NCBI GenBank assembly: GCA_044892525.1
Contig: CM097885.1
Span: 200,756,001 to 200,820,000, forward strand
DNA length: 64,000 nucleotides
From: Schmidtea polychroa
Taxonomy: Eukaryota
Direction: 5' to 3'
The notes under the pieces were generated by a model, which searched no databases, was not told the origin of the DNA, and saw only the letters and a program-made list of their open reading frames with translations. The position numbers and the translations under genes are program-made. The number at the start of each line of letters is the position of its first letter. Within the stretch, counting starts at the first letter, position 1. Positions 10,039 through 54,548 of this stretch are shown here, one piece after another.

Positions 10039-10454
10039 CTGGACACAATAAATAAATTTAATTATAATAATAAAAAAGACAATAATATTAATATGTTGAT
10101 GATGACAAAGAGTACATTATACGTACAATAGGACTCGCTTAGCGCGGTTTTATTGGCATAGTGGAATCTGCGAAACAAACAGGTTCAGATGAGGTAAGTG
10201 TTCAAAATCTCAAAAATTATTGCAAGAAACAGCAGAAGTCTTTCTAATTATGAACTCAAAGAATTAGCGGACCAAGAAGGACACCAAAATATGAACTTGC
10301 AACGGCATTTCTAAAAGCCAGTTTTGTTACTATAACAGAAATTATGGACCAATTTCTTGAAAATGACACAGGCAAAGACGGAGTGACATGGAGGCCATGT
10401 CCAAGAATACTAAAGAAAAACGCAGATGACATTAGATACATTCTTGATACCTTT

Positions 10455-11969: not shown

Positions 11970-12198
11970 CAGTGATGGCGTCCTCCAAAAACGGTTTCTC
12001 TACTGGGCTGTCTTCATCGATTGCTGCATCCAATATCTCAGCAGTGATCCAATGTAGCGACCGAATACGTTTTTGCAACTCAAGATCTTTTGTTTCATCG
12101 TCAGAAAAATTCGGTTTGAAAGCCCAATCATAGATTTGAATTGTTAAAAATCGTTCGACTTGTGCCATCAACTCTTCAGCTTGACTTTCAGACATTAA
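11970..12198 (-). CDS. RABGEF1: Rabex-5 exon 4
   Basis: DDETKDLELQKRIRSLHWIT matches Rabex-5 DDEKKDLAIQKRIRALRWVT; 58-nt intron upstream; phase-1 donor. Confidence 0.9.
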
Positions 12199-12256
12199 CT
12201 GCAATTAGGGAATTTATTTGTTTAGACTATCAACAATTTGAGCTTTCTTAGATTAC

Positions 12257-12379
12257 TCTATAAAGTGTATCGGTTTTGATTTTCTCTGATAATCTTTCAT
12301 AAAATTTCTGTACAAGAACCGAATGCTGTTCGATTTTCACTGATTTCGCTTCTTCCAGTACATCCAAATGTATTTTAAT
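12257..12379 (-). CDS. RABGEF1: Rabex-5 exon 3 (helical bundle)
   Basis: AG/GT-bounded 123-nt exon IKIHLDVLEEAKSVKIEQHSVLVQKFYERLSEKIKTDTLYR; aligns with the Rabex-5 helical bundle. Confidence 0.8.
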
Positions 12380-12736
12380 CTTAATATTGAACATTTTAAA
12401 ATTCATTATACTAATTTCGGTTCTATGTACGTATGCAACATCTTTATTTGTTATTTAATACTGTAAATTTCATATTATCTAAGTAAATAATTTGCTTTGT
12501 ATGAACTTTGTATGAAGTGTATAAAACGCTTTTATGGTATTTCCTGAAATTTACAGATCAGTACATGTAAAAAAATGCAAAACAAGTCATTACTATATGT
12601 TTAGAATTATTTAAGCTGTTCATTTTAAATATTTAATAAAAAAATCAGTTTTTAGTTGACTGGAAATGTCACCAAATCCACAGTTAGTAACCAATTTTTT
12701 ATTACGGGCCTAACACCCATGATTATATATTGTTGT

Positions 12737-12828
<92 letters not shown>
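12737..12828. repeat. (ATT)n microsatellite
   Basis: About 30 uninterrupted ATT units. Confidence 0.95.
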
Positions 12829-12880
12829 AGAACTTTTATTTCTTCCAATTTCACCACTGATTATTTTTTCCGTCGCAGTA

Positions 12881-13835
12881 TCATAATAATAATAATAATA
12901 ATAATTTATTAAACAGAGAGTTTGAAGACTATAAATCAGTAATATATCGATGTTTGTTGATACTCACGAATTTTCGGCACTGCCTTCTTCAGGTGAATTT
13001 GATCATTATTACATTTAATAATTATTGTTAGGGAAAAATAAATTTATTTCGTATTTTATAATAAATTTATTGGTTGGTTTAATTATATTTTATTTTTAAA
13101 TAACCAAATATTATTTCTTATTTTTTAAATTTTATAATTTAATTTAATTTTTAATCTTTTAATATTTTATTTTATAAAAAAAACCGTTTTTATATTTTAT
13201 ATATATATTTTTTTAATTTTAAATTTTAAATCTAATTAAATATTAATTTAGTTGAATGTTGATGGACGGTTTAAGTTTATTGATATAAAGAGTCTCCGCG
13301 GCTAATCTTTGCAATGAACTTTTGAACGCATCTTGTAACATTTTGCATTTTGTTTCGTGTAAGAGTGGTGCTGATTTGTGCACTTTTTTCCAGTGTTAGT
13401 GATAATTGCTGGTTTTGCTCTTGACGTGTTCGTTAAGTCTTGTTTGGAACGTTCTATGTGTTTCACCTATGTACGATGCGTTACATCTTGTGCAAGTAAT
13501 TTGGTAAACAATGTTCTTTGAGAAGCAGAAACATTTGGTGGAGGATTGGCATAAACAATCTCGATGAAATAGGTCTGATGTTAGAGCTTTTTGAGACTTA
13601 CGAAGCTGTGATTTCAAAGATGCAGCAGTTGTAAAAATTGGGCGAATATGAACTGGCAACTCCATATTGCGAATGTAAGCTCTGATTGTATTACATGTCC
13701 TATTGTTTTAAAAAGGGGATGCGTAGGTATATTACAGGCTTATTGACATGTTCCATTTGTGTATTATGCCTATTAGAGTTATATTCACTCAAAAAGTATT
13801 TTTCTACCAACTCCTTCAAACTCTCTGTTTAATAA

Positions 13836-13915
<80 letters not shown>
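12881..13915 (-). mobile_element. Truncated Penelope-like element with (ATT)n tail and an inverted copy of its 3' end
   Basis: Minus-strand GIY-YIG ORF (NIVYQITCTRCNASYIGETHRTFQTRLNEH). The 3' end cttcaaactctctgtttaataa(att)n occurs on minus at ~12927-12881 and on plus at 13814-13915. Confidence 0.82.
12963..12997 (-). ncRNA. Minimal type I hammerhead ribozyme motif (PLE type)
   Basis: Minus strand ttCAC-CTGAAGA-A-GGC agt GCC-GAAA-AT-TC|GTGag; palindromic AATT stem III. Confidence 0.7.
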
Positions 13916-15265
13916 GATACTGCGATTTTAGAAACAAAAATTATTTATCTATTAAGAGAAGCAATGAGTATGATTATTGTCAATATCATTGGATATAAAA
14001 TTTTAAGAACAATGTGAATATAAAGTGCAAATGCATTCTCGGAGGAAAAGAAGCATGGATATTTCATGATAATTAAAACTCAAATTGCAAACAAAAATTA
14101 TTAAATAAACACTAAAAGATGAAAAAGTATTCCACAATAAATGGTAACAAGGAAAAGTCTTTCGTATTCCAAATATTTTACAGGTTTGTTAATTATACCG
14201 CATGGAATTCGTATTATTTTCTATGTTGAAGTTTACTATTCTTCTTATCTTCATATTTTTCAGAATATTTTCAATACAGCTTAAAGCAAGGTTTTATAAC
14301 TGGAGCTATTAATAAATTGTTGAATATGACAATTGTACAGGAAATTTCATTAAACTCCAAATAATGATCAATGTATAAAACTCAAAAATAAGCCTAAGAA
14401 TGATTGTAATTTCATGTTAAATAAAATTTCACTTTAACTTTTATGAATTTTAAATCAACTGCCCTGTCATATGATGCGCTAATAAAGGAGATATATTAGA
14501 ATAACTCAATGGTTTTTACAATTTTTATCAGTGTAATTCTGTATAATTGGTAATCCTCTCAAACTATATTTTATTACTATAAATATAACTCTAACAATAT
14601 TTTTAAAATATTATTCTAAACAGTTCATAGGTAGCAGTAAACTTCTAAAATAATTCATTTTAAAAGGACGTTAAAAAATCACGATTTAAAGTATTTTTGA
14701 ATTAGATTGGAAATGTATATGCTAGAAATTAGTAGAAATATTTGAGAATTAAAAAATCAGAATAAAATAAATATCGAATAAACATGAAAGAAGAAAATAA
14801 AAAGATTGGAGATGACATAACGATATCAAGAAACATTTGATAACAAATGTTCAATTCAACGGATACGCTTTCAAAAATGTTCATATTGAATAAAATTTTT
14901 AGTGTTATTTTGTATAATTATTACCAAACATTTATATAAAGTGACTTCAATATAAAAAGGATGTTAGAGAGAAGGATTTGAGAAAACAACTTTAAGACAT
15001 GAATGCCCAAACTTTAACTGACTATTGCAAGAATATATCGTTTCTCTCAAAGAGAAGACCAACATGCATTCCAACAAGGATTTACTAAAGGGTATTATTT
15101 TGGATAATACTACCCGACAAAAATAACGATGACCAGAACAATTCGTATAATGTTCGACTATAAAAATAATAGTCCATTACGATAAGGATTATTTTTATAG
15201 TCGAAAATTTATTCATTTTATTGAATATATACTTCGCAGCAAAATGCTTATATTATCATCTAATT

Positions 15266-15624
15266 CAGAGATTTCCAACCGGTATGTCGCGACACTTTAG
15301 TGTGTCGGCAGCGCTGCATAGGTGTGTCGCGTGAACATAATGAAAAGCCAGAGTCCCTTAATTTTATAAACTTTTTAACGATTGTTAGACTGAAATACAA
15401 TACACATATATAGTCCGTCGTGTTTTAGCTGCAAGAACGCTTGTTTACCCTATTTATTAGTTAATCGTTGGAATTCGATATTTATATTTGTCTCTTGTAT
15501 AACGGTTTACCATATGGCGTAAATTGTATGACGTCTGGTTTTCTGGTAAAACTGCTTTGTTGTGTCGCGAAATGATGGAAGTCTAAAAAGTGTGTCAAAA
15601 GCATGAAAAGGTTGGAAAGCACTG
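15266..15624. mobile_element. hAT (Charlie-like) MITE, 359 bp
   Basis: TIRs CAGAGATTTCCAACC / GGTTGGAAAGCACTG; 8-bp TSD atctaatt/atttaatt (7/8). Confidence 0.85.
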
Positions 15625-15939
15625 ATTTAATTGATTAACATGTAAAGAAAACAATCATTGTAGAATTAATGGTAATTATTATTAAATTCCGTATATAAGC
15701 TGTTCCTAGATATGAATTAGTATTAGAAACGTCACAATTGCAAGATTACGCCAAAATAGATGACGTCAAGAGCATCCTCATAAAATTCGGTCAGTGAATT
15801 TATGAGTATTTTTCGATTCAATATCCAATAGTTCAATAATTTTCACTTGATAAAAAATTACTAACTTTCATTTTTATTTATTTTAATCCAAAGATATTTT
15901 GACATGTTAACTATATAAAACATGTAGTATCTTTTTCAA

Positions 15940-16060
15940 TAGATTAGCTTTTCAACAAAGAAACTTATCAATAAATATTTGCGATCAACAATAGGACTTT
16001 CAAGACTTTCGGATTTGGTTCTATTATCAATTGAAAGTGACACGGTGAAGGATATTGTTT
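15940..16060 (+). pseudogene. hAT transposase C-terminal dimerisation-domain remnant
   Basis: INKYLRSTIGLSRLSDLVLLSIE resembles the hAT consensus KNYLRSTMxQxRLxxLALLSIE. Confidence 0.6.
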
Positions 16061-16833
16061 AATCTGTTTGTTTCATTCATATGTCCTTATTAACTTTTTT
16101 ACTTATTTTACAAACAATACTATCAGCGATTATGTATGTTCTAATACAGTAACATTCGAGGGAGGTCCATGACTCCATGGTGTAAGTCTGGGCTATGGAG
16201 AGGTGACATCGACACAAGTGGTGCCTCTGAATTTGTCGCCAAATTAGTAGTAAGTCTTAAAAAGGCTAAGGAACACCTCATTATTGGTTACCCCGCTACA
16301 CAATTTGAAAATTACAGCCCTAGAGGAATTTATTTGAGACTCGCCTCGCACCTCAGTGAAGAGTTATTTAAACAAAGTAAATAGAAATCATACTCAAGAT
16401 CCATAAATTAGCTACTGCCTTGAACTGATAAATAATCAATAATCCGGTTCAAAATTGATTGAAAACAAAATTTTTGGTTTTTAATTTAGTTTTTTTTCAT
16501 TAGGTATAGTTAAATTAAATATTTAGATTAAACTTTAATTTCCGTTTATTGATTGATATAATTAGCATTATAGAAATAATTAATTAATAAAGCAGCCCCT
16601 CCCAATAATATGCTTCCAAAGTAATTTATTGTCATGTAACAAGACAGAAGAGGAACTAGCAAGGTTATTGCGCAATTACATTCGGGTATTTACTCAATCA
16701 TGTACACAAAAACAGAAATAAATTGAAATAATTTATAATCATAAAATTAAGTCTATCTTTAACAATTTAATTTAAAAGACTTAATTAAAGAATAATGATA
16801 TTTAAATATTTTAATAATTGAAATTATTTTAAC

Positions 16834-16927
16834 TTGTTTAGTAATATCATTGACAATGGGCTTTTTGAATTTTGCTAAATAATGATCAAATTGTAATTTA
16901 GCATCTTTTTCATCTGAACTTTCCGGG
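16834..16927 (-). CDS. RABGEF1: Rabex-5 exon 2
   Basis: 49-nt GT-AG intron (16976-16928), then in-frame PESSDEKDAKLQFDHYLAKFKKPIVNDITKQ; the 3' donor is the less certain boundary. Confidence 0.75.
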
Positions 16928-16976
16928 CTAGATAAAAGAAAAGATCAATTAATTGCTGAGAAAAACTGCAATTAAC

Positions 16977-17251
16977 CTTAAATCTAAATTAGGTTTGAAT
17001 AGATTCTTTACTGAATTCGGGCTTTTAATTGGAACAAATATACGTTTTTCTTCAGATTTTGTAATATGATTTAAAGATGTTTGTGAAGTTTCAAATGATA
17101 CATTTTTGGGCAATGTAGCTTTTTTTAGATAGACATTCCGAAAACAAACGGAGCAATAATAATGCCATGAAGGGTTACCATAAAATCCACAACCATTTTT
17201 ACAACGAAGATCTTTGTCATCAACTTTAATTGTAGAACGCTTACTGGACAT
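16977..17251 (-). CDS. RABGEF1: Rabex-5 exon 1 (A20-type zinc finger)
   Basis: MSSKRST...LRCKNGCGFYGNPSWHYYCSVCFR matches the A20 ZnF of Rabex-5; GT donor at 16976. Confidence 0.9.
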
Positions 17252-19144: not shown

Positions 19145-20272
19145 AATTGAAATCAAACTAAATCAATATAAATTGCTCTTTTTTAAACAAACTAATTACT
19201 AATTCATTAATTTTTTTTAAATTAATTTCGCTAAAAATTTACAAAATTCTGTTTTTTATATTCAAACTTTAAAAATTATAAAAGTTTTGAAAGTTCTGGA
19301 TAACTGTCGACTGAGGGAATTGATTTATATCAGCAAGCACAGTTTTTTTTAGTCCTACATTTCAACGTTGGAAGGTGGTATCTAATTCCTGTTTTTTAAA
19401 CTTCGTGTTTATTTGTGGATTTCAATTCTTACTTAGATGGTTTTCGGATCTTGGTTATGAATATTTATGTCATGGGTGCAATGGGGTTCTGACACAACAA
19501 AGTTTCCTTCACCGATATCCAATTTTTTTACAATCATTAAAACATTTTCTCGTTGTTATCCACAAGCTTTTTTTACCTATAAACCGCTGATAAAAAATAA
19601 CATTTATTTAATTAGTGACATGAATTCACTTAATTTTCGTGCACTTCATTTGATCATTTTTTCTTATAAATAAGCAGCTTGTTTTTTGGCCTTTGAACGG
19701 CGCTTTTAGATACAGAAAATAGTTTGATATAGTTTCCAATTGTTGGCATATGTGGGGAAAGAAAATGTGCACACACAATTTCCCTACCTATCAAACGTCA
19801 GTATTCTGCTCAGACCATTCCCTCACACATTCCATATGATTATTCATATATTCCCACGTATGAGCCCGTGGTGATGTTCCACGTTGGTGATGCTCACACG
19901 GGTCGACAAAGGTTAGCAGGTGAGCCCCTGCCTTAGGACTACTCCTAACCCCTGCTCGGTTCGGGTCCTACGGTGCCTTAGAAGGTCTTACCCTTGTTAC
20001 TCATATAATTCAGTCCAACCTCGGTCCAAAGGGGACGACATTTGAGTTCATATCATATCTCCAAAATCACTTTCCTATTTAAATCAATCAACGCAATTCA
20101 CACATACAATTAACATACTCAAAGAAACCGAACAGTTGTATTGAAACAAACGATAACGAAAAAACATTTAAAGGGATATTCACTATTGACTGAATAACAA
20201 CCAAACATTGAAAATTATACGCCAGACAATGTCAAGTTCTTAGAGTTCTTTCTCAATGCAGGGAATCGAGAC

Positions 20273-21049
20273 TCATGAGAAAGGTTGTTGTGAGAATGCT
20301 TCTCCTTCCGCGAGCATTTCGTCAATATCGACGGGTAAATAGTGATCCGTGACATATTTAATTCCTCCCGCCGGAACTATCTTAAAAATCTCCTTGGAGG
20401 GAATTGAATGATTCGAGGATATTTCCTTTATGGTGGAGTTAGCTGCGGATAACGACGCTTTGAGAGCTGCCATCGCATCTCGGCGTTTCTGGTTTTTCTC
20501 GGCTCGGGTTGGACGTTTCCGTTTGCGAGATGATGGATGGTTATCCGCGTTCGAGGTGACGACAGGTGCTATTAAGATGGGAGCTAAGATTGAATCGGTA
20601 GGTCCACCTACCAAAGGTTGATAGCTCGATAACGTTGGAGCCGGAACTGGTGGCAAATATGAACCATGCCCTTGACAGCTGGTGGTAGTCAATTGAGGTA
20701 CTTGATGATGAAGCGGGAAGACATTTGTACCCTCCAAGACGGGAAACTCCCGCACCCGCTTGGCCAGTTCCGCCTCCGTATAAACTTTATGGAGGGCCTC
20801 GGACTGGGCTTTAATAGTCAGCCTTTGGCATCGGCTCTCTTCCAGTAGGCTGTCCCTACAGTGCTCCAGCCTGAGGATCTTAGCCTTTTCCTCCTTCATC
20901 TGTGGCGGGGAGAACCACGTTCCTTCATAAAGATCTATCCTCTTCTTGAGGGCCCCTATATATAAATGAAGTTGCGCGATGTCCGAGTTCTTGTCAGAGC
21001 AAGAGAAACACGGACGAAGTTCTTTGGATTTATTGGATGGTGCTGTCAT
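20273..21049 (-). CDS. Unknown 258-aa protein carried by element A
   Basis: Intact ORF starting immediately after an acceptor (ttctag|ATG); homologs at 41940-42664 and ~31345-31597. Confidence 0.75.
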   Translation of the reverse strand: MTAPSNKSKELRPCFSCSDKNSDIAQLHLYIGALKKRIDLYEGTWFSPPQMKEEKAKILRLEHCRDSLLEESRCQRLTIKAQSEALHKVYTEAELAKRVREFPVLEGTNVFPLHHQVPQLTTTSCQGHGSYLPPVPAPTLSSYQPLVGGPTDSILAPILIAPVVTSNADNHPSSRKRKRPTRAEKNQKRRDAMAALKASLSAANSTIKEISSNHSIPSKEIFKIVPAGGIKYVTDHYLPVDIDEMLAEGEAFSQQPFS

Positions 21050-23337
21050 CTAGAAAATAAATCATGTTTCACACTTAAAAGCAACAATCATTATCCTATT
21101 AGTTGAAATTAGAACCTATACTCAGAAAATTCATCCATCACGCCAATCAACAGCATCTACTAAGATGACTTGTTTCACTCATCCGCACATTCCACATTCA
21201 GTCATTTACGAAACAGCATTCAACCGCATTGCTTTAATCAAGATACTCAAGAGAAGAAGACGGGGAATATTAAATTCAATTTATTACTGAAAAATCTTCA
21301 ATTTACTCTATATAATAAGGAGTTGTATGTTAATTTCTATCTCAGTGTTAACCCTAAGGTTCATAATGACGAGTTAAAATTTAACAAATGCAATAATATG
21401 TGGAAGTTAAATTATATCATTAACGTGGAAAAATTCAAATTATGCCAAAATGCATCGAAAGTTAAATTATACAAAATTTGTAACCGGCGCTATATTCGTC
21501 GTCATGGTGACGTCTACTTGTGTGTGTGGGTGCATCAAACTCTCAGTGCTGGCGATGCGAGTTCGTGTGCCTAGGTACGATAATTTCAACTCACGCTTTT
21601 TCTCATAGTGTTCATTTCATCTACCTCAGTGTAACAGATGTCATCTACTCATTCGTACTACCCACTGTCTCTTTCTCTCCAGGAGCTGTCGTCAATTATT
21701 ATGTAATACTACTATTATGGATGAAATCTATTGCCTAACTCGAATTGTCGTTTAGTGGAGAAGAGATTAACTATGGGGTGTATAAGTGCGTGTAATGTAC
21801 GAGTCCTAGTGGCTTATCACTTTGTCGGAGACGTCATGAGTAATTTGTCGTAGATACAGCACTACCATAAGACTGACAGAAAATTCGAACTGGAATGGAC
21901 AACCTAACTCTCTTATCATACGATCGGCTCTAATCAACATCTACCTACGCATCTACACAGTCAGCTCGGTATGTACATCAGTCGGTGCTTATCTCTGTCA
22001 GAGTTTCGTCGGGTATTCAATTCGGGCGGTTATCATCTGCCTAGACTTCACTCCTCAATTCACTGATAATTCTCACAGCGATTCCCTTGATTCAAATAAT
22101 AATTAACTGATAAGTCTGATAGCGATTTCTTGCGCTTTTGTAGAAAGTACTCTGATAGCTTCTCCTGGTTTATTTACTCGATTTTCGGGAAAACGACGCT
22201 TATCGAAAATTCAAGGTCGACAATCTCACTTAAAGTACATCGGCGAACGGGTGTGGGCGCTAATGTCCTCCTGATCTAAATCGAATGATGTCTCAAGAAC
22301 GGTCTATTGCCGGATTCCATTTAGAGCTATTGGTGTTGTGAGCAACAAAGATTCATTCTGACCACTCTGATCGACAAGCGGATATCGGACACAAGAAAAT
22401 GCTCTCTTATCGAGGTGGATTTTTATTAACAAGTTGCAAATGTAACTGTGCTTTTCTTTTCAATCAGAATCGTCGTTTGGAAATCTAAGTTGTCTCCACA
22501 TTTCTCAGAAGAACCGGTTAACTGGATATAATGACAAAGAAAAATTCTACAAGCGATCGTGATCGGTGAAGGAAATTCTCACTGTGCAATTAAATTCTCT
22601 AAGCTCCTGAGTTTCCTCACCCCTCATGACCACCCAAGAAGGCATTCATTGCTGCCGCCGTTCTTGCACCGTCATGAGGGACAAATCGACCCTTTCACAT
22701 TTCGATAATCAAAATTCACATGCAATTATAATGATGATAGATAATAAATAAAAACAAATTACCAGACGACCATATCATTTGGACTCCAAGTGTGATGCTC
22801 CCTCATTCCCAAATCACCAGTTCAAATCCAGCATTAATTAGTACTTTCTCAATTTACGTCAATTCTCCTCCATTCCAAAAATTTCGCAGCATCTTCGTGA
22901 CGCATGTCATAGCAATTCTTCGCGTCTACGCTCTCGCATTGGCATCACACTTGAAGTTACCAGAGGATACAGTCGTCGGCACCATGAAGAAAAAGCCATT
23001 ATGTTTTAAATAAAGCTTTATTAACGAAATTATTCTTGTCTATTCATAAAAATTTATTAACAAATAATCATAAATATATATTAAATTCAATCCTATCAAT
23101 CATCAATAACTTAACATACCTTGAGTTCGAATTACTAGATCAAATCGGTTGATGCTAAAATGTTCTCCTGGATAAATTTAATGATGGTTCACTGTAAGTC
23201 CTTTTCTAAAATCGGTTTTGAATTAGTCTTCTGTAATAGCTGTAAGTAAGTCTTGAAATCTACAATCTGTAGAGATTTTGTTAAAGTGGTCGTGATTAAT
23301 GGAAATATTTTTACCTGTAGAGATTTTGTTAAAGTGG

Positions 23338-23392
23338 TACTCTACTAATTTTTCGCGTTTCTTATATACTATTTTTCGTCCAATCAGGACGC
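23338..23392 (-). promoter_or_regulatory. CCAAT + TATA promoter of element A, pointing inward
   Basis: Minus strand ctgattggac...gtatataag; same arrangement in element C (~44837-44895). Confidence 0.6.
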
Positions 23393-24699
23393 GTCTTGGC
23401 TTGTAATTTTATTATTTATTATTATTTTTATATTTTTATTGTAATTTGTTAGCTTTTAATAACTTAACTTAGTACTTATTATTATTTTATTTATTTTCTT
23501 ATTTCTGTTATTTTTTTCCTTATTTTTTCGTATTTTTCCTACGGTTTTATTGTTATTTTTTGTAACATAATTTTGTTTTAATTAGACTTATAATTGGTTT
23601 TATTTTTATTTTGTTTTTATGGTAATTTATTTTCTAACTTTGTTATATTACTTCTATTTTGTCTGTTGGATATCTTGGATTTTATCTCTTTTTGTCTTGT
23701 TCTTACATCTTAGGGGTTTATTTATTTTGTTACTTATTCCAATTTCTTTTCTTAATATCTTATTATTCTCCTTATTTATTACTGCGATTTTACTGTAATT
23801 TATTTTGTATCTTATTTGTTTATTTACGGGGTTCGTCTTCTTCCGATTTGATCCAGTTTTTCAACTCCAAAACTTAGCCCAACACAATGCCACTACCTTT
23901 TTCAAGTGTGTTTATTATCTCAAGCTTTTTTTTCAGATGAGTTGGATTTGATTATGAATTTTCATTATTGCTATTTTTAATTTTATCTTAATCTTCACTT
24001 TCAATATTTCGTAAATGATTAGAATGATAAAATAATATGAATAATAATTTCTCTTATTAAATTCGACGCGAAATTAGTTTTATCATTTAAAAGCTAATCA
24101 GTCTTATCAGAAAAATTATCATTATAGTATATATTCTAAGAATTCACACTGAAAATACGAGTAAAAGGACTTTTTTTATACATTTCTTTTATGAAAGCTA
24201 TCTACAACAATAAAGGTAATGAGTTTAGCTGCAAATATTACTGAATGAATCGTCTTTTGTTGACCAAGTATTTATATGAGTTTTTCTGAAATTTACCAAA
24301 CCAGTCGAAATTCTATAATATGCTCGTATTTTCTATTTTTATGAGTCAAAAACTGTCAGCCGCTGGAAAACTAATGACTATCAAATAGCCAGGCCGTCGA
24401 CAGACGCATCGCTCAAAGTTCACGTGCAGCAACAATACTTTAGTTAAGTTTACTTGCTTACCTTGTTGTTAAATTTATATATTTGCTGTGCAGTATTATG
24501 TTCTCAAACTTAAATAAAACGAATTCAAAGATAATATATGATTCGTCTTTTATTATAATTGTTCAATAACATTATTTTTTATTTAAAAGATATAGATAAA
24601 TAGTTATAAAGAAGTAAGCCTTACGATGATAATAATGACGATGTTAACGATCAGGCTGATGAGCCCACGCCTAGTACAACTAAAAATTTCCCTTCTCCA

Positions 24700-28154: not shown

Positions 28155-30985
28155 TAAGGTGCATATTAAACGTATATATAAACGTATATATAAAACGTAT
28201 ATATTTAAACGTATATATAAACGTATATATTAAACACGTTCTCCGACGAAGCATTCGGTGTTAGGTTTTTCTCAAGAGTTGGTAAGAAATAAACTCCCCA
28301 CGAAGGAAGATGTTTTAAAGCTAATATATTGGTGAGAGCGCAACAGTTAGAACAGGAAGTCAGATAAACACTACTAATGAATTATTAAAAATTGTAGCTC
28401 ATAATGATATGGGAGAAAGCAAGCATTCCAACAATTCTAATTCCTAATATACTTGCTCAATTGAAGAAGATCGTAAAAAGGAACAAAAAATTACAATATC
28501 TGCAATGTTCATAAAAAAGACTTACGCGTAAAACAAAGTAAAATGAGTTCTTAAAAATAAGGTTATCAACTCCATCAACTAGTCAAATGGAAACAAAGTT
28601 GATTCATGTATATGACACAGAAAAGCCCAATTTCGTCATTAGTTCAATTAAAGAAAACTTTTAAATTGGTCTTGATAATTCCAAAACTGAAAAAGAAGAC
28701 AGCAACCAAAACAGATGCAAATATCCTTGTCTAAGTGCAGTTATAAACAGAACAGGCGTTAGCAATCTAGACGCAAGTAAAATTATTAATGCATGCTTGC
28801 ACAACATGGAACATGCTCAGCTGAGCAATGTACTGGAAGCGACAAAACTCAAAAGATTGAGAGTGTATTGGCGTAAAAAGCCTATAGAAAATCAAGCAGA
28901 GCAAGTACAGGGACTAATATGAATTGATTTCGATGGCAGAAAAGATGACACAAAAGTGGTAGAAACAGATAATATCAGAAGAACACACAAACAAGACCAT
29001 TATGTTGTCAACTCATTTCCTGGTGATCAGTACAGTGATCATGTGTCTCATCAAATCGTTAATTCAAGCGATATGACCATAGAACTTGTTAGACGCAATT
29101 AAATTCAAATCTTCTTCAAACATTTATTTTTTATAACAACTTGAAATTGTATCTTTTTTTTAGTGTATTTAAACACCGAGGCGTGATAATTCTTAATATT
29201 AATGTAGTTACTGGTCATACATTTAATTGATTTAATTTATATAATTTAATATAATATGATATAATTTAATATAGAATTTAAATATAAAAATTTAACAGAT
29301 AATTATTTCTACTAACTGATCTCACTTCTATCATTTAACCATAATAATTTTATATAGGGGTTTACTAACACCTTACATCCCCCCTTCTTTAAAATGCTTT
29401 AACTTTTCTATATTCCTCGTTATTTTTCTCCCGTTTTCGTCTGTTAATAAGTAACTTCTTTCATGATTTCGTTTTATTACTGTGTATGGTCCTTCATATC
29501 TTTCGTGATCTTTGTTTCTAATTTCTTGTTTCACCAATACGTCGTCCCCCACTTCTAAGTTCCTAGTTGTGCCAATTTCTTTCGCTTGCTGTCTTTTAGC
29601 CTCTAATTTCCGCATGATTTCATTTCTATCCACTTCATTGTTACTATGCCATTGCGATCTATTAATCTTTCTCCCAAATATAATTTCTGCTGGACTCACT
29701 CCAGTAGTTTTTTGAGCTGTTGCATTTAAAACGTATTCTATATCAGGTATTAATTCTGCCCAGCTTTTTTTAACTCCTTCTCTGAGTGACGCGTTAATAT
29801 AGTCTCTTTTAGTACGAAATTATCTTTCGATTACACTATTAGTATTATGATGATACGGACTCGAAAATATCAACTGAATTCCTGCTGCCTTTTCTAGTTC
29901 TTTAATACTATTTGCTTCGAAATTCTTTCCACGATCAACATGTAATTCCTTAGGGGCTCCAAATTTCAATATCCAATTATTTAACAAAACTGCCTTTATT
30001 ATATTTTCATCTTGCTTTCTAAAAGGAGTTAGAGATATGTATTTGCTGTAATGATCGATTATTTCACAAATATATTTTTCTCCTCTGAAGGTTTCTCTTA
30101 ATGGACCGCAAATATCCATGTATATTTTCTCCATAGGTTCTGAAGCTTGAATTACTTGAGTTTTTTCTTTTGACTTTGTAGTTAAAACTTTGTTTTTCTG
30201 ACATGCTTCACATATTGAAATAGTCTTTTACTTCATTTAGCAAATCTTCCATATCAAAATTGTTCCTAATATAATTCATAACTGTTTCTACTCCTGCGTG
30301 GCATAATAATAAATGTGTTTTCTTAATCATTTCTCGTCTTTTTGTTTCTGGTATCCATATTTTGTTTTGATTGGTATAGATAATATTTCCTTTTAACCTT
30401 TATTTATTATTTTCTTTTCATTTATTTGATCTTTTATTTTTTAGAGGCGTGATAATTCTTAATATTAATGTAATTACTGGTCATACATTTAATTGATTTA
30501 ATTTAATATAATTTAATATAATATGATATAATTTAATATAGAATTTAAATATAAAAATTTAACAGAGATAATTATTTCTACTAACTGATCTCACTTCTAT
30601 CATTTAACCATAATAATTTTATATAGGGGTTTACTAACTCCTTACAGAACTGTTGTCCGTAATCCACGACACCAAGTCTATTCATTCATTATGCGATATC
30701 ACCAATGTCAACACAGGGCAAAATAACGGTGTCATACGGAAGCTGGAAATGAGCTGTGACTTATTTGCATGTTGCATTTGACTGAATTGCCCTTTTGAGA
30801 TGTCAATAAACTACTCGATGGTAAAACCTTTAGATCTACACAACTGACGGGTGCCATTGGATGTTAACTCAATTTGGACCCTTGCTCAATACCCATTGTG
30901 TCATTTTGCGCAAATGTTGGTCAAGTGGTGAATTTGGATGCTGACTTTGAGGATAATCTCACTCAAGACCAAAAACTTTGCTGAT
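28155..30985 (+). mobile_element. Degraded hAT-superfamily (hATm-like) transposon, split by the 29087-30646 insertion
   Basis: TAAGGTG start with aaacgtatatat subterminal repeats; IWEKASIPT, FDGRKDDT, TNVNTGQNNGVIRKLE, LICMLHLTELPF and DNLTQDQK motifs; frame restored across the GAACT TSD. Confidence 0.7.
29087..30646 (-). mobile_element. Internally deleted Ty3/Gypsy element F (partial 5' LTR + integrase + 3' LTR)
   Basis: 5-bp TSD GAACT; 3' LTR 29087-29377 after the PPT; 5' LTR remnant 30444-30646 fused directly to pre-integrase sequence (HLLLCHAG...C..C, DICGP). Confidence 0.9.
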
Positions 30986-31344
30986 TATAGTGAGAGGGGG
31001 CTCCTTGGTCCTCAGAATTTCAATACAAAAAGATGTTCCTCGCTAAAAATGACAAGGAATTTTCTAATTAAATTAAGGTGGGTCTCCTTGGTCTTGGGAT
31101 TTTCAATACAAATATCAGTCTTCACTAAAAAACCAAGGATTTTTCTGTTTTAGTGAAGGGGTTTTCAATACAAAAATCCTGGGATTTTCAATACAAAATC
31201 CGATTATAACTAAAAAGTTGAATTTTCTGACTATAGTGACTATATTCGAATTAACTTGAATTGAATTGTTTTTGAATTGACTTGGGTTGCATGGATCTAT
31301 CGCCTTCCTTCAGCGCACATATTGACCCTATATCTTCTGGGCCC

Positions 31345-31597
31345 TGTCTTATAATACTTGTTAAGGTTGAATGTGGTGATGGGCCTACCCTCATCATCCA
31401 ACACTTGGATGGTGACGAGGATCCGCCGCGAAGTGGTGCGCTGCAAAAACGTTCGTTGGGTTCACAACTGGCAGCTCTCGAATCCGGGATTTCAACTCCG
31501 TGTTGGTATAGACTTTATGGTGCTCTTGGGACTGCTCCTCGATGAAGATCCGTTGTGCCCGGATCTCTTTTAACAGATTATCCCGGTAATGTTCTAG
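31345..31597 (-). pseudogene. Third, fragmentary copy of the element-A/C unknown protein
   Basis: LEHYRDNLLKEIRAQRIFIEEQSQEHHKVYTNTELKSRIRELPVVNPTNVFAAHH aligns without gaps to residues ~61-115 of the 258-aa ORF. Confidence 0.8.
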
Positions 31598-32324
31598 CTG
31601 GATATATAAATATATATATATTGATAGAACAAAGGATGAGTTCTATATTAAAGTTTAAAGAGAATTTTAGGCAATCATAAAATATGCAGATTTCCCACCA
31701 GATTTTTTTCCCGCTGGCTCAAAAAAAGTATTCGATCATCCAAAATCACTAGACTTAAATGAAAGTAGTGGTGGCCAAACTTATTTATACTTGGGCCAAA
31801 AAATGAAATTTACATGATTCAGAGGGCCACAAAAATTTTTTTTTCAATCATATTAAAAAGTATAAATCCAAATATGTAATACAATTGATGGAAATTAAGT
31901 GTATTTTATTTATAATTAAATTTTAATTCATTTTTAATTCAGTTTTGTAAAAAAATTAAATACAAAATATATACATAAAATTCCAAAATTGTAGTTTTAT
32001 TTATTTTAAATAATGAAAGAATGTATTACCTTTATTATATATAGTGGATTAAGAATGGTCCTATCAGTAACACCAGCGACAAAGAGGATATTTACTAAAA
32101 TTGCTAAATAAGAAATCGAAAACATGAAATTGTATGTAAATTTATATAAATAATATGTTACAGAAATCTAAAAGGTTTTAATATAAATTGATGGTTAAAT
32201 TAATATTTATAACCGACAATTTTATAGTATTCAAGCCAAGGAAAAAAAGCTGATCAAAAGAGTTTAAGGGAGAATATATTATTTGTTTGATGAATACCCG
32301 TTTATTACCCATATATATCCGTGC

Positions 32325-41033: not shown

Positions 41034-41373
41034 GTAATTTTGATTTTGATGAAAATGCTGGTTATAATAATGTAAATAATTTTTATAATGTAAATAATTT
41101 GAATAATGTAAATAATTTGAATAGTGTAGATAATTTTAATTTTTTTTAGTAAAGATTTATGTAATAATATGGATGATAAAACTAATTTTAATGTTTATAA
41201 AAGTAGCAGTATAGATCATAGAAATGAAAACAGCAAAATAATGTATAGCGATGAAAGAACAGGAGAAAAAGTATATAGTTTCTTAAAAATGTCATTTGAT
41301 ATGAATGAAGATAAAATTGGGTGGATTAATGAAATTTCCAATAGCATAAAGAACAAAGTGGAACGAAATATAT

Positions 41374-44300
41374 TGTTGGCGGGTAACTACTCAGATGACC
41401 CCCCTTTGTTCCGCGTTTAATCTAGAGGATGAAATGCCCACATCGATTTCGCTCGCCTTTATTTTTGTCATCGCTGAGCAGGACCCGTACATAACCTACA
41501 CTCCAGCATAGCACCCGTGAGTTGCGTCACGTTGGAACTGTGCGATGCCGGCGAGACGCCAGTAAGCAGGTGAGCCAGCTCTTTCGGACTACTCCTTACT
41601 GAGGCCTCGACTTCCTAACCCCGACTGCCGATAGAAGGACTTACGTCTTCTCACTCTGTCGCCCGTCGCGATGCCCCTAATTGGAGTTTCTAACTGACTA
41701 ATGCTCCTCGTTTCGTGAGACTCTCAATGCTGTTCACCTATCTCGTATTCACTATTTTACGACAAAACGAAACGCATATATAAATGAAAATGGTTTATTT
41801 TTGGCATTATCATGCAAATACATCGAGAGCTTATACATCAATATTTACAAGAACAAGAAAAACATAAAGATAAAACAAAAATGATTTCGGCAGGTGTTCT
41901 GGTCTCTCTAGAGAATGAGGCCAATTTCAGGGGAGATCCTCATTTCTCCCACTCCGAGTCGGCGAGTAACTCGCTTAGATCAAAAAACTCGGCGGCGTTT
42001 TCTTCCCATGTCACCCCGGCGGCGGAGATGACTCGCCCGGAGATCCCGGCTGTTAGGTCGACCATGGTTGGATTATTGTTACTGCTGACTGGAGCGATGG
42101 TTGACGATGTACACTGCTTGACCGATGCCCGCTCCCGTTGTTTCCGTTTGCGTTCGGCTCGAGACAGTTGCCGACGTTTCGGTTTCGAAGTTGCAGGTGT
42201 TTGCACGGCCGATGCCGATGCAAAGTTCGCCTGGACCCTACTAGTCCCGGTGACTTCAATGTCTGGGTTTCTGGGAGAAAGCTCGGTCTCCACGCACTCA
42301 CGGCAAGACTTCCTGAGAGGAGATGAAGACCTGACAGAGGTATCGTGGTGCGCTGGGAAAAGATTGCTGGCTTCACCAATTGAGATCTTCGCTATCTTCC
42401 TGGTGGTTGCTGCCTGGACATATAATTTATGCAGCGCTTCCGACTCTGTGCCCGGCTCTCGGCAATTAGTGCATCACAGCAATGCTCACTTCGATACAAC
42501 TTCTTCCGGGTCTCCTTCATCTGGGAGGGACTAAACCATGTCCCCTCCAGCTCGTCTATCTTCCGTTTGTACTTTCCAATTTGAGCCTGTAGGTCTCTGA
42601 TGATCGAATTCTTGTCTGCACAAGAAAAACAAGGCTTGAGAATGGTTTTTGGATTGGGTAACATCTGGAGAGGCTAGGAAGAGAAGATGAAAAATAAAAA
42701 TAAATCTAAGTCAAATTGGAACGTCTCATCCGGTGACAATCATACTTTACTGACCATAGGTAGTTTACAGACAAACCGGGTTTATTAGCCTAGAGAAATC
42801 CCTTATACAACGGGTCTTGTATACTTTGGGTCATCATTCATATGATCATTCATACAGAGCTTTACTGAAGGAAGATAAGGTATAACCCCTGATAAGGGAA
42901 ACTACAAGTTAATGAAATAAAAAAAATTAATTAGTTTACTTGAAAAGATCAAACAGCCTGGAAAGGTAGTTTAGATTAAATTAAAGATGTACCCTAAGCA
43001 AATAATGTGTAGATCTGTTATGGAACTATGTCAATAACTTAGAAACTTGTTATTTATAACAGGCAGGACTCTATTAATTCCCCTTCAATTATTTATTGAT
43101 GATAATTAAGACCTTTACAAGTTGTTTGCAATAATTTAGTCAGGATAAATAAGAAGTTTTCTAATTAAATTATAATCATTTATTCATGCACAACCCAAAC
43201 TTGTTCAGATTAAATGAATACACAACTTCACGCAAGTGAACCCTAATTAATTATCTGGCTATTGCCTACTACTTCCAAACGGTGAGAATCTAGCGTCTGT
43301 CATTAGCTTGATGGTAATTCAGCTGACACATTATGTCTGATTCCCGGCGATTTATAGTGCATGTGGGTCTATATACTACATTGAACCTCTGCCGTGAGTC
43401 TAAAAACGTGTGATCACCTGGAGCTTCACTCTCACCTACTTATTAACAATCGCGATTTCTGACAAATGTTCTCATGCGATATTTTATGTTTGAGTATGCA
43501 TGCAGATGTAGTTCCTCCGTAGCATGTAATGCTAATTGATCAGCTGTGCACACACCCCAAATCCTTCTTCTCACACTATTGACATGCGAATTATCAGGGA
43601 AATTTTGGAAAATTAAAATTCTATGCATCACTGTTATAGAAATTTTTCTACTTCGTGGACGGTTTCTCTAAAACCCCTCAACTACCATTTCTCAATTCAA
43701 CTCGTGGCCCTCGGTCATCATCAACATATGCTATCTATTCCTATCGATTTGAAAATTTATTGCTTGATTCAACTCCGGATTGCAATTCAACGGTAGACCG
43801 AGAGTTCATATTTAATCTGTAAGCATTATCACGATAAATTGTTTTCTAAAAATTACATTTTTCCTGATTGGAGTTACTTGTGCTTTTAATAATAAAAAAA
43901 ATTGTTTGAGACTATTTATTTTCGTAATTCTATATAACTACCGCTTTAAGAGAAACTCATGGATGATGAAATGAGTAATCACGAAAGTTCGTTGGCTGGA
44001 AACCGTAAGACTAGACTTTGAGTAAAATCCGGAACCCCGATAATAGGTCACACATAATATTGCTAACGTTTGAACAGTTTTTGACGAAGGACTTGAATCT
44101 TTTGGCGATAGAAAAAATTTGAACGGAGTAAAACGATGTTATGATACGATAGTGCGACACCCTCAATCACTACGCGAATATACAAAAATTTTTCCAATTC
44201 ATGTACTCATTCTTCCACACTATTCTTCTCGCATGATTTTCTATCGAATTTAGTCGCACCTTCAGCGACGGACCCGTGAGGAAGCCCCCACATTACGGCC

Positions 44301-45224
44301 CGAATCAGCTGCGTGATTGAAAAACCCCATGTCCACCGGCTGAGCTCCCGAAGGCACCTCACACCATGACATGGAGTATCTCAACGCCACGTTTCTCGAA
44401 AAATTTGAATAGCATAAAATCACAAATAATAAGATTACTGATGCATAATAAATCATTTATTGTTAAATCACTAAATCATTCAATTACGTAACGCATTTAA
44501 ATCAAACGAAAAGAGAACAAAATTTTAAAAATAAAAATTATAATTAATGCATATATACATAATTATTGCTTAATAGACCTAAATATAAAACGAAAAACTC
44601 CTTACCAAGTATTCAATATAGGCTGAGTCGAAAACACTGGGTCGAATCGGTTGATGCTTGAGTAGAGTATAGATTTAGTTGAAGTTTCTTGATTTTCTGA
44701 AATAGTCCTTGTAAGCTACTGTAAGTCGGTGGCTGTTAGCTGTGAGTTGTTGTTTCTATTGCAATTGTTGGATTAACGGTAATTAACGGTAGTTAAAATA
44801 CACTTACCTATTGCAATTGTTGGATTAACGGTAATTATTATGATTTTAATGTCTGCTTATATATTAATTTTCTATTTACGCGGACCAATCAGAATTGAGT
44901 ACCGCATAATTTTATTATTTTAATTTATTTTCCTTGTTTTTGAGTTATTTCTTCCTATTTTCTTTATTTTTCTTATGTTTTTATTTAATTTCTTTGATTT
45001 CCTTATTATTTGCTACATTTTACGTTATTTTTCGTCATTCTATTGTCCTATTTTAATTTTTCTTAGTTTTATATTTTTTGTTTTAATTCTTATTTTCTAA
45101 TTATTGTTTTTATATCTTATTTTATTGTATTCCTAAATTTGTTTATTTTATTTTGTTTTCTTTTAATCTCTTGCTTATTTTACTTTCTTAGTTTCCCAAA
45201 TTGATTTTCCGACTCAGCCCAACA
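41374..45224 (-). mobile_element. ~3.9-kb LTR-like gene cassette (element C) nested in pol of element B
   Basis: TGTTGG...CCCAACA; 4-bp TSD ATAT; removal restores B pol ...VERNI|FTKDEWKGPR in frame. Confidence 0.9.
41940..42664 (-). pseudogene. Homolog of the element-A unknown protein, one ~19-nt frameshifting deletion
   Basis: PCFSCADKNS...EGTWFSPSQMKE...EHC..ESRAQ/SEALHK; starts at ctccag|ATG. Confidence 0.8.
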
Positions 45225-48200
45225 ATATTTACGAAAGACGAATGGAAAGGACCTCGTATGACTTATCATAAAATGCTAGGTAGACCAAGTATAACACTTG
45301 AAATTCAAGGACGCGGAATCGAGTGTCTATTAGATACAGGAGCACGAGTTAATGTAATGTCTAAAGCAGTACTGGATAAATTGGACAAAGTCGAGATAAT
45401 AAAAACAGATGAAATGCTAAGGTGTGCAAATGACAGTAAATTGGAGACTATAGGAAAAGTTCAAATTGAGGTAAAGATAGGGAAGCTAAGAAAAATAGTG
45501 ACCTTTACCGTCGTAGAAAACATTGTCCCAGATGTTATTGGGGGTATAGAATTACAGAAACAATTCGGTATTGAATTAAGATGGATTCAAGAAGGTGAAA
45601 TGATATCTAACGAACGTATATGTGAAATTGATGCTAAATTTGGGAGGAATATTACAAATGAAGAAAGATTCCAACATGTGATAGAGAAGTTGAAAGTAAA
45701 AGAAGATAAATTGCTTGTAGAAATTATCAAGAGAAATAAATGTGTTTTCATGGCTGATAAGTGGGATGTTGGATGCACTGATTTAATTCAACATAAAATC
45801 GAAACAAATGGCGGACCAATAATGAAAAAGCCCAGAAGACAGCCTATAAACTTGGAAGAGAAAATAAACATGGCCATTAAAAATCTGGAGGATAATAATA
45901 TTATAAGGAAGTGTAATTCACCTTGGAATACCCCTTTAGTGTGCGTTTGGAAAAAATAAAAGAAGGATATCAGACTCTGTTTGGACTTTAGACAACTTAA
46001 CAAAATTACTGAAAGACAAGCGTTTCCGATGCCTAACGTTGACGAGATCTTAGATGCTTTGCATGGTACTAGATATTTTAGTTCTATTGACCTTGGAAAC
46101 GCATACTATCAGTTGAAGTTGGATAGAGATTCACAGGAGAAAACAGCTTTTTCAACGAAAGAGGGGCAATTCTGTTTCAACCGAATGCCGTTTGGCATTG
46201 CGGCAGCACCAGGAACCTTTCAAGAGCTCATGACGAAGATATTAAAGGATTTATGGAAAGACGGGGTAATGGTTTATCTGGACGATATATTAATTTTTAC
46301 TAACACAATGGAAGAACACTATAAACTGCTGGAAAGAGTATTGCAGAAAATCGCAGAAGCTAAACTAAAAATTTATCCTGAAAAATGTCAAATACTGAAA
46401 AGCGAAGTGAAATTCTTAGGCCATATTATAATTAGAGACGGCATCCAAACAGATCAGAGCAAAATTGAAGCTATTCAATCATTTCAAAGGCCGAAATGTG
46501 TGAAAAATTTAAGGAGTTTCTTGGGTATTTGCAACTATTATCGAAAATTTATTAAAGAATACGCAAAGAAGGCAAGAGCTTTAGAGAGTATATGTGGTAA
46601 AAATAGCGACAAAATAATATGGAATGAAAATTGTGAGCAGGCTTTTGAGAATATGAAGTTGGCATTAATAACCGCACCGATTTTGGTATTTCCTGATTTT
46701 TAGAAAGAATTTATACTGGATACGGATGCAAGTTTCGATACAATTGGCGCAGTCTTATCACAGAAGAATGACACGGGATATGAGCAAGTTATCGCATATG
46801 GCTCACATGCGATGAATGACCACAAAAGAGGCTATTGTATTACAAGAAAGGAACTCCTGGCTATATATTATTTTTGTCGGCATTTCAATCACTATTTATA
46901 TGGGAAAAGATTTACACTACGTACAGATCATAAAGCAATAACATTTATGCTAACCACGAAGAAGCCAATTACAGCTCAATTCCAGACCTGGATAAACTAT
47001 TTAAGTAGTCTTGATATAAAAATGGAATTTAGAAAGGGTACACTACATACTAACGCAGACATGTTATCAACGAAAACGTGTGGCACATGTGTACAATGTC
47101 TTATGGAACACGATAATCCTAAAATGGGAAGAATGACAACCAGAATGTTAAATATAATGACTGAAGACAAAGGAGAGGAATGGCAAATGAATAGTGATGA
47201 AATAGAGGAGATTAAAAATAAAATAAGAACGCAAACGAGTGGAAGGTTTATAATAGAGGATAATATTATTTATACCAAAGATAAAAGAATATGGATACCA
47301 GAGAGCAAAAGAAGCGAAATGATTAACAAAACACATCTATTACTGTGCCATGCTGGAGTTGACAAAGTTATCAAATACATACAAAACAATTTTGATATGA
47401 GAGATCTAATAAAACAAGTAAAAACGACAATATCAAATTGCGAATCGTGCCAAAAAGTTAAAGTTGTAAGTACAAAGATGAAAGGGAAACCAAAAGTACT
47501 TGAAGCATCCGAACCCTTCGAGAAAATATATATATGGGCATATGTGGCCCAATGAAAGAAACATTTAACAGGAAAAGATACATTTGCGCAATAATCGACC
47601 ATTACAGCAAATACATCTCGTTAACAGCTATAAATAAACAGGATGAAGAGACAATTGGGAAGATATTGTTAAACAACTGGATTCTACAATTTGGGGCACC
47701 CAAAGAACTACATCTAGATTGCGGGAAAACATTCGAAGCTAATAGCATAAAGAATATAAGCAAAAATGCAGGGTTCGAGATAGTGTATTCGAGTCCATAT
47801 CATCATAATACGAATGGTATAATCGAAAGACAATTCCGGACAATAAGAGATTTTATTAATGCATCGTTGAAAGACGGAAATACAAAAGACTGGGCAGACC
47901 TTATCCCAGATATAGAATATACATTCAACGCAACCATTCAAAAAACAACGGGAGTAAGCCCAGCTGAAATTATTTTTGGTAGGAAAATTGATAGATCAAA
48001 ATGGTATAATGATAGTAGAATCAACAGGAACGATATCGCATTGAAAATTGAAAGTAAAAGACAAAATGAGGAAACAACAACTGCAAGGAGGTTGGATATT
48101 GGAGACAAAGTTTTAATCAAACGAGAAATACGAAACAAGGATCAAGATAGATATAAAGGACCATACACAATAACAAAATGAATACACGATAGCAGTTATA

Positions 48201-54509: not shown

Positions 54510-54548
<39 letters not shown>

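What the first reader, a model, noticed from the sequence alone, without database searches (positions are those of the whole stretch)
19741..23884. A ~4-kb mobile gene cassette with retro-integrase-style ends: possible giant gene-bearing LTR
Seen: TGTTGG...CCCAACA ends, a perfect 4-bp TSD (CAAT), and insertion into a pogo transposase whose frame is restored on removal. No direct LTR pair, long TIR, RT or transposase is visible. Read from the right end inward on the minus strand: ~500 bp A-rich region, CCAAT, TATA, ~25-nt exon 1, 48-nt intron, 147-nt ATG-free exon 2, 2070-nt intron, then an exon starting exactly at ATG and encoding 258 aa. Element C repeats this layout (~30 / 52 / 150 / 1941 nt / AG|ATG) and shares AGCATCAACCGATT.GA.C.AGT in exon 2, although most of its DNA is unalignable. 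Established: TG...CA ends with 4-6 bp TSDs are products of retroviral-type DDE integrases; solo LTRs and Ginger transposons look like this. Inference: these are either solo copies of a ~4-kb LTR whose R/U5 holds a complete spliced gene, or a non-autonomous cargo unit moved in trans. I do not recognise this architecture.
Basis: partly seen in the sequence, partly recalled or inferred. Interest (0 to 1): 0.92.

Follow-up and report, generated by a model that had tools for sequence, protein, structure and literature searches.

The report
Gene-bearing 4-kb LTR-like mobile unit
A 4-kb repeat with retrovirus-style ends, present in three diverged copies in this AT-rich (probably planarian) window, carries its own promoter, two introns and a conserved small protein gene. 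It is most likely a solitary long terminal repeat left by a giant retrovirus-like element, not a new class of transposon.

Summary
Element A (19741-23884) and element C (41374-45224) both start TGTTGG, end CCCAACA and have perfect 4-bp duplications (CAAT, ATAT). A truncated third copy, B, lies at 30652-31605.

A and C share one minus-strand layout although most of their DNA does not align:
- an A-rich head, CTGATTGG, then TATATAAG;
- a 24/30-nt first exon, a 48/52-nt intron, and a 147/150-nt ATG-free exon;
- a ~2-kb intron ending AG|ATG, then the ORF;
- two covarying hairpins near the 3' end.

The 258-aa protein has no Pfam, PDB or fold match. Diverged homologues occur in chimeric gene models, at least one from Schmidtea mediterranea.

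Two features are new here. Exon 1 is repeated perfectly at the end of intron 1 in both elements. The first ~55 nt of each element are complementary to the conserved block in exon 2.

There is no RT, integrase, transposase, ribozyme, long TIR or internal LTR pair.

Best reading (about 0.5): solo LTRs of a giant planarian Ty3/gypsy-type element carrying an accessory gene. An independent unit moved in trans is not excluded, because the source genome could not be searched. The 'pogo' flank was not confirmed.

The parts
19741..23884 (-). Element A, the complete unit (4144 bp), TGTTGG...CCCAACA
19737..19740 (.). Target-site duplication CAAT, left copy
23885..23888 (.). Target-site duplication CAAT, right copy
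23873..23884 (-). A: 5'-terminal 12 nt, conserved with C (11 of 12)
23388..23872 (-). A: A-rich head (53-61% A on the sense strand)
23361..23387 (-). A: CTGATTGG (inverted CCAAT) and TATATAAG, both conserved in C
23315..23338 (-). A: exon 1, which is repeat copy 1 (24 nt). It starts 30 nt after the first base of TATATAAG.
23267..23314 (-). A: 48-nt GT..AG intron. Its last 24 nt (23267-23290) are a perfect copy of exon 1.
23120..23266 (-). A: exon 2, 147 nt with no ATG. It holds the conserved motif (23134-23156).
23831..23868 (-). A: terminal arm, complementary to the 3' part of exon 2 (23122-23160)
   Evidence: (I6)
21050..23119 (-). A: 2070-nt GT..AG intron, 38% G+C. No conserved coding sequence and no Pfam domain.
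20273..21049 (-). A: intact ORF of 258 aa (helical hairpin, disordered linker, basic helix)
19855..19958 (-). A: two adjacent hairpins, conserved with C through compensatory changes
41374..45224 (-). Element C, the complete unit (3851 bp), with the same ends. It lies between gag and pol of a Ty3/gypsy element.
41370..41373 (.). Target-site duplication ATAT, left copy
45225..45228 (.). Target-site duplication ATAT, right copy
44808..44837 (-). C: exon 1, which is repeat copy 1 (30 nt). It starts 26 nt after the first base of TATATAAG (44856-44863).
44756..44807 (-). C: 52-nt intron. Its last 30 nt (44756-44785) are a perfect copy of exon 1.
44606..44755 (-). C: exon 2, 150 nt with no ATG. The conserved motif is at 44636-44658. 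The arm at 44618-44663 pairs with the terminus (45167-45222).
42665..44605 (-). C: 1941-nt GT..AG intron
41940..42664 (-). C: homologous ORF, broken by one frame change. No stop lies inside the aligned parts.
41503..41609 (-). C: the two conserved hairpins
30652..31605 (-). Element B: a very diverged, 5'-truncated copy whose terminus reads TGTTG. Only residues 59-115 of the protein are recognisable (56% identity).

Best explanation
A, B and C are solitary long terminal repeats of diverged families of a giant Ty3/gypsy-type, retrovirus-like element. The likely host is a planarian, and the elements are of the 'Burro' kind. Each LTR was put in place by a retroviral-type integrase, which explains the TG...CA ends and the 4-bp duplication. 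It was left alone after recombination between the two LTRs (inferred).

The LTR reads on the minus strand. An A-rich U3 head leads to a CCAAT/TATA promoter. Transcription starts at the first copy of a 24-30-nt repeat. A 171-180-nt ATG-free leader is assembled by removing a 48-52-nt intron. The donor at the end of exon 2 then joins an acceptor placed exactly at the ATG of a small accessory gene.

In a full-length element the same leader donor could also serve downstream genes (inferred). The protein has a helical hairpin and an arginine/lysine-rich helix. I take it to be a nuclear, nucleic-acid-binding regulator or adaptor of the element (inferred, weak).

The complementarity between the first ~55 nt (the start of U3) and the leader, and the two hairpins near the other end, would be cis-acting RNA signals of the genomic transcript. 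They could act, for example, by 5'-3' cyclisation as in Ty1 (inferred).
For: - Ends of TGTNR...YNACA type with only a 6-bp inverted repeat, and perfect 4-bp duplications in two copies. PMC2836005 gives this pattern as typical of gypsy LTRs.
- No enzyme domain, ribozyme or internal LTR pair.
- Promoter, splice sites, ATG-free leader, ORF, hairpins and termini are conserved, while about 2 kb of intron is unalignable. This is selection on a replicating lineage, not decay of a dead cassette.
- The protein family is real. Eleven relatives share invariant W45, P48, L68, E71, R73, Q75, R76, Q82, P112 and H115.
- One relative is fused to a segment 100% identical to S. mediterranea bL21m. That species carries thousands of gypsy elements over 30 kb long whose LTRs must be at least 2.5 kb (PMC6431247; PMC11410931).
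- The window is more than 70% A+T.
- The terminal-to-leader duplex is -31.7 kcal/mol in A and -33.1 in C. It ranks 2nd and 1st of about 400 windows. Only 4/500 and 1/500 shuffles do as well, and the paired sequences differ between A and C.
- Both arms lie in one sense transcript only if that transcript runs through the upstream-of-TSS part, as in the 3' LTR of a full element. The Ty1 CYC5/CYC3 pairing is a precedent (PMC3592414).
Against: - No paired copy and no adjacent PBS, gag, pol or PPT of a giant element is in the window. All three copies are alone.
- With the TATA only 360-520 nt from the 5' end, R plus U5 would be 3.3-3.6 kb. I know of no LTR with that proportion; the ordinary gypsy LTRs here have about 70 nt after the TATA.
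- No canonical poly(A) signal lies between A's stop codon and its end.
- None of the relatives' gene models is fused to gag or pol.
- The duplex is as stable on the plus strand, so its RNA sense is not shown.
- No sequence of a published giant LTR was compared.
- That the window itself is planarian is inference.
Confidence: 0.5

Rival explanations
1. An independent, non-autonomous unit of about 4 kb. Its ends are recognised in trans by the integrase of a resident LTR element or by an integrase-derived transposase. Its only gene helps its own propagation or expression. This would be a cargo unit without LTRs and without an enzyme.
For: - All three copies are single units; two have perfect duplications.
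- Each carries a complete promoter-to-ORF transcription unit.
- The proportions are unlike any LTR.
- Relatives in gene models lie beside host genes, never beside gag or pol.
- The 4-bp duplication differs from the 5-bp one of the ordinary gypsy element that hosts C.
Against: - A unit copied through RNA from its own start site could not regenerate the 0.4-0.5 kb upstream of that site without an LTR-type mechanism.
- If it moved as DNA, nothing would keep the two exon-1 copies identical in each lineage.
- Long persistence with a conserved ORF and diverged families is unusual for non-autonomous elements.
- No partner enzyme with matching ends is seen: the gypsy LTRs in the window end differently.
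Confidence: 0.25
2. A non-autonomous member of the Ginger (gypsy-integrase-related) cut-and-paste DNA transposons.
For: TGTNR ends and 4-bp duplications are Ginger features (PMC2836005).
Against: - Ginger elements have inverted repeats of 40-270 bp; here the repeat is 6 bp.
- Ginger1 targets CCGG or CCGT and Ginger2 targets RTATAY. The sites here are CAAT and ATAT in contexts that do not fit.
- There is no transposase remnant.
Confidence: 0.07
3. Not mobile: a dispersed host gene family whose flanks look like duplications by chance.
For: The ORF is conserved and has introns, like a host gene.
Against: - Identical terminal hexamers and perfect 4-bp flanks occur twice.
- One copy sits inside a retrotransposon whose LTRs differ by only 7 of 338 nt.
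- A third copy is truncated among retrotransposon remnants.
Confidence: 0.02

Closest known systems
Solo LTRs of giant planarian Ty3/gypsy elements (Burro / GYPSM1; PMC6431247)
   Same: AT-rich planarian-type context, multi-kb LTR size, TG...CA ends with a short duplication, and accessory coding capacity in the element.
   Different: No sequence comparison was possible. I found no accessible description of a spliced gene, duplicated first exon or terminal-leader complementarity inside those LTRs. The promoter lies near the 5' end instead of the 3' end.
Retroviral LTRs that carry coding sequence: the superantigen gene of mouse mammary tumour virus in U3, and foamy-virus accessory genes reaching into U3 (my own knowledge)
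   Same: A gene lies inside the LTR and is expressed from spliced transcripts.
   Different: Those genes lie upstream of the LTR start site and have no promoter-leader-intron unit of their own inside the LTR. There is no protein similarity.
Ogre LTRs of dicot plants (1.9-6.5 kb; PMC6431247)
   Same: LTR length of several kb.
   Different: Plant elements. The length is not reported to come from a spliced gene.
Ginger1/Ginger2 DNA transposons (PMC2836005)
   Same: TGTNR ends and 4-bp duplication.
   Different: Ginger elements have long inverted repeats and a transposase; both are absent here. The target preference is also different.
Ty1 CYC5/CYC3 long-range RNA pairing (PMC3592414)
   Same: Complementarity between a 5' leader segment and a segment that would lie near the 3' end of the genomic RNA.
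   Different: Here it is only predicted, is equally stable on either strand, and is seen in solitary units.

Membership tests
LTR of a Ty3/gypsy-type retroelement (solo LTR) | 5'-TG...CA-3' ends of TGTNR type with a short inverted repeat | tested here: met
   TGTTGG...CCAACA in A and C, TGTTG in B. Pattern as given in PMC2836005.
LTR of a Ty3/gypsy-type retroelement (solo LTR) | Target-site duplication of 4-6 bp | tested here: met
   CAAT and ATAT, both perfect.
LTR of a Ty3/gypsy-type retroelement (solo LTR) | U3-R-U5 organisation with a promoter and a poly(A) signal | tested here: inconclusive
   The CCAAT and TATA boxes are conserved. However, 3.3-3.6 kb follow the TATA, and there is no conserved canonical poly(A) signal after the ORF.
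LTR of a Ty3/gypsy-type retroelement (solo LTR) | Other copies occur in pairs flanking PBS-gag-pol-PPT | not testable with these tools
   The source genome is not searchable. No pair lies in the window. Exact protein look-ups found no contigs.
Burro / GYPSM1 giant planarian gypsy | Sequence similarity to the published LTRs | not tested
   Referred; no tool here holds these sequences.
Burro / GYPSM1 giant planarian gypsy | Planarian (Dugesiidae) host | tested here: inconclusive
   Protein relatives occur in S. mediterranea gene models, and the window is more than 70% A+T. The window's own species was not identified.
Ginger DNA transposons | Terminal inverted repeats of about 40-270 bp | tested here: not met
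   Only 6 bp.
Ginger DNA transposons | Integrase-like transposase, or ends shared with an autonomous copy | tested here: not met
   No Pfam domain in any ORF of A or C. No autonomous copy is available.
LARD/TRIM non-autonomous LTR elements | A pair of direct terminal repeats within the unit | tested here: not met
   No direct repeat of 16 nt or more joins the two ends.
Retrozymes / Penelope-like / R2-type elements | Hammerhead or HDV-like ribozyme | tested here: not met
   No Rfam match, even at E<=1.

The most novel reading that the evidence does not exclude
The 4-kb units are never part of a larger element. They would be a class of enzyme-free mobile gene cassettes, inserted by a retroviral-type integrase supplied in trans. 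Each would carry one spliced gene for a small basic coiled-coil protein, plus self-complementary and self-repeating leader signals that are renewed at each copying cycle.
Probability: 0.2. Interest if true: 0.85.

Novelty: new variant of a known kind. Interest (0 to 1): 0.5.

Why it matters
If these are LTRs of giant planarian retroelements, they show how an LTR can grow to 4 kb. It does so by housing a complete promoter-leader-intron-ORF unit for an accessory protein found nowhere else, together with conserved RNA signals. That would put planarian giant elements among the 'complex' retrovirus-like elements with spliced regulatory genes.

It would also explain a set of chimeric gene models in Schmidtea. 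Copies like A lack a clear poly(A) signal and lie upstream of host genes in the same orientation, so they could give fused transcripts or mislead gene prediction.

The perfectly renewed exon-1 duplicate is a small puzzle about how such units are copied.

Tried and rejected
Protein identity
- Pfam gave nothing. A PDB profile search gave nothing below E = 0.18.
- The AlphaFold model (pLDDT 66; helices 20-41, 49-89 and 182-213 are confident) matched nothing significant in PDB or BFVD.
- I had wondered about a Rev/Rex-like arginine-rich regulator or a bZIP protein. No tool returned either. One relative has a sub-threshold Pfam REV hit (E = 0.0013), which I do not count.

Relatives and context
- Three word-based protein searches found only four or five chimeric models.
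- Six exact look-ups found no contig. No genomic DNA of relatives was therefore obtained.

Other checks
- tblastx of A against C found no conserved coding sequence in the 2-kb intron.
- Rfam found no ribozyme, spliced-leader RNA or other family.
- A test for strand-specific G-U pairs in the terminal-leader duplex showed the plus-sense duplex to be just as stable.
- As a control, the first 60 nt of the two ordinary gypsy LTRs pair best inside gag, not in their leaders. This gives no parallel.
- Pogo: the two flank pieces have no Pfam match.
- Literature: the primary genome paper on Burro is not held. The papers I could read give no LTR length or LTR-ORF description.
Full report
**What is there**

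The window is more than 70% A+T and full of retrotransposons.

Element A spans 19741-23884. It starts TGTTGG, ends CCCAACA, and is flanked by CAAT on both sides. Element C spans 41374-45224. It has the same ends and is flanked by ATAT.

C lies between gag and pol of a Ty3/gypsy element (39656-48620). That element's 338-bp LTRs differ at 7 positions, and its own duplication is 5 bp, CAAAT. So C arrived after a fairly young insertion.

A tblastn search with A's protein found a third copy, B (30652-31605). It is very diverged and truncated, and its terminus reads TGTTG.

The three copies in 64 kb belong to different sub-families. A and C align at about 61-65% over the first ~0.8 kb, part of the ORF and a block near the 3' end. 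They do not align elsewhere.

**Anatomy, read on the minus strand**

A and C share the following parts, in this order:
- a conserved 12-nt terminus;
- an A-rich head;
- CTGATTGG, then TATATAAG;
- a first exon of 24 nt (A) or 30 nt (C), beginning 30 or 26 nt after the start of the TATA box;
- a GT..AG intron of 48 or 52 nt;
- an exon of 147 or 150 nt;
- a GT..AG intron of 2070 or 1941 nt that ends exactly before the ATG;
- the ORF.

The leaders contain no ATG. To count ATGs across the junction I joined the two leader exons inside that script. No search was made with a joined sequence, because the coding part lies in one exon.

The long intron is 35-38% G+C against 26-30% around the elements. 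It has no conserved reading frame and no Pfam domain.

About 110-290 nt from the 3' end, both copies fold into the same two hairpins. All 30 predicted pairs form in both copies, and 11 pairs changed on both sides. Slid controls give at most 2 such pairs. This rests on two sequences and on a structure derived from them, so it is suggestive only.

**The gene**

A's ORF (258 aa) is intact. C's ORF has one frame change and no stop within the aligned parts. In B only a fragment of the ORF is recognisable.

The protein has no Pfam match. A full HMMER scan of 1.84 billion representative proteins gave eleven weak hits (E = 1e-8 to 3e-4). Of the ten scanned against Pfam, eight join a host domain to a shared module with ten invariant residues. 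The host domains are a transporter, glycine-cleavage P protein, CRAL-TRIO, ABC, L21, subtilase, actin and a phosphatase. P0001 (927 aa) showed only weak, sub-threshold low-complexity matches and was left out of the alignment.

One of these models contains 108 residues identical to Schmidtea mediterranea bL21m. So the family exists in that planarian. The hits look like elements swallowed by gene prediction.

The model has a confident helical hairpin, a disordered middle and a confident basic helix. It resembles nothing solved or predicted for viruses.

First, exon 1 is repeated perfectly as the last 24 nt (A) or 30 nt (C) of the small intron, although the repeated sequence differs between A and C. 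Perfect identity within each diverged lineage points to renewal at each copying cycle, or to a strong double constraint. I have no tested explanation.

Second, the conserved exon-2 motif is part of a block complementary to the first ~55 nt of the element.
- The duplex is -31.7 kcal/mol in A and -33.1 in C.
- It ranks second and first among about 400 windows.
- It is matched by 4 and 1 of 500 shuffles.
- The paired sequences differ between the two elements.

The terminal arm lies upstream of the predicted start site. Both arms therefore lie in one sense transcript only if transcription runs into the unit from outside, as through the 3' LTR of a full-length element. Ty1's CYC5/CYC3 pairing is a precedent. 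The duplex is as stable on the other strand, so this remains inference.

**What it is**

Several kinds are excluded.
- Ginger-type transposons need inverted repeats of 40-270 bp; only 6 bp are present here.
- LARD/TRIM elements need terminal direct repeats; there are none.
- Ribozyme-bearing retroelements are ruled out by Rfam.
- No enzyme is encoded.

Asymmetric TGTNR...YNACA ends with a short duplication are the mark of an LTR. Planarians carry thousands of gypsy elements over 30 kb long, with an interior of up to 25 kb, so their LTRs are at least 2.5 kb.

I therefore read A, B and C as solo LTRs of such giant elements, carrying an accessory gene. My confidence is about 0.5.

Three things argue against this:
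- no pair or giant interior is in the window;
- the promoter sits near the wrong end for an ordinary LTR;
- A lacks a canonical poly(A) signal after its ORF.

An independent unit moved in trans remains possible, at about 0.25.

The source genome, its transcripts and the published giant-element sequences could not be searched. I did not excise A to test the flanking frame; the two flank pieces were read apart.

- Script one search printed the bounds of the first open piece of C's broken ORF, which discloses the place of one break. I have not repeated it.

Noticed in passing
window 9746-17251, minus strand: A host gene of Rabex-5/RABGEF1 type, with an A20 zinc-finger exon (16949-17251) and a VPS9 exon (9746-10048). 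Its start lies about 2.5 kb downstream of element A's 3' end, in the same orientation. A has no canonical poly(A) signal after its ORF, so read-through or chimeric transcripts are conceivable, like the fused gene models of the relatives.
   Followed up: partly
window 39656-48620, plus strand: A Ty3/gypsy element with 338-bp LTRs (7 differences), a primer-binding site TGGCGACCACGCC and a 5-bp duplication CAAAT. Its gag is open (40122-41033). Its pol (45201-48181) is in four open pieces, which means at least two in-frame stops and one frame change. Element C is inserted between gag and pol.
   Followed up: partly
window 54549-58843, plus strand: A compact, nearly intact gypsy element with the same primer-binding site as the one above. 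The held parts of its LTRs are 100% identical over 243 nt. The 3' LTR runs into a run of N, which I left as it is.
   Followed up: partly
window 29178-30646, minus strand: A gypsy remnant: two ~200-bp LTR copies 1266 nt apart, enclosing an integrase fragment that is 70-79% complementary to 47262-48270. Its outer LTR edge lies 4 nt from element B's terminus.
   Followed up: no
window 32470-36185, plus strand: Interior of another gypsy element, with a gag-like stretch, RNase H (34446-34814) and integrase (35280-36185). No matching 3' LTR is in the window. It or its flank truncates element B.
   Followed up: no
window 31606-31625 and 54516-54548: An (AT)n run lies directly before the start of a gypsy LTR at 54549, and a similar run lies at the truncation point of B. 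This may reflect a target preference for AT microsatellites.
   Followed up: no
window 59700-63300: Several unclassified repeat families. Units share a block of about 70-95 nt (for example 61596-61689, 61756-61849 and 63162-63264) and ~79-nt AT-rich repeats (59784-60246).
   Followed up: no
window 12675-13927, 36878-36983, 60291-61598: Dispersed AAT-rich low-complexity arrays that match one another in both orientations.
   Followed up: no
window 8267-11050: Short, nearly identical repeats inside the introns of the host gene: 8267-8379 with 9200-9312 (99%), and 9312-9412 with 10950-11050 (96%). They may be miniature elements.
   Followed up: no
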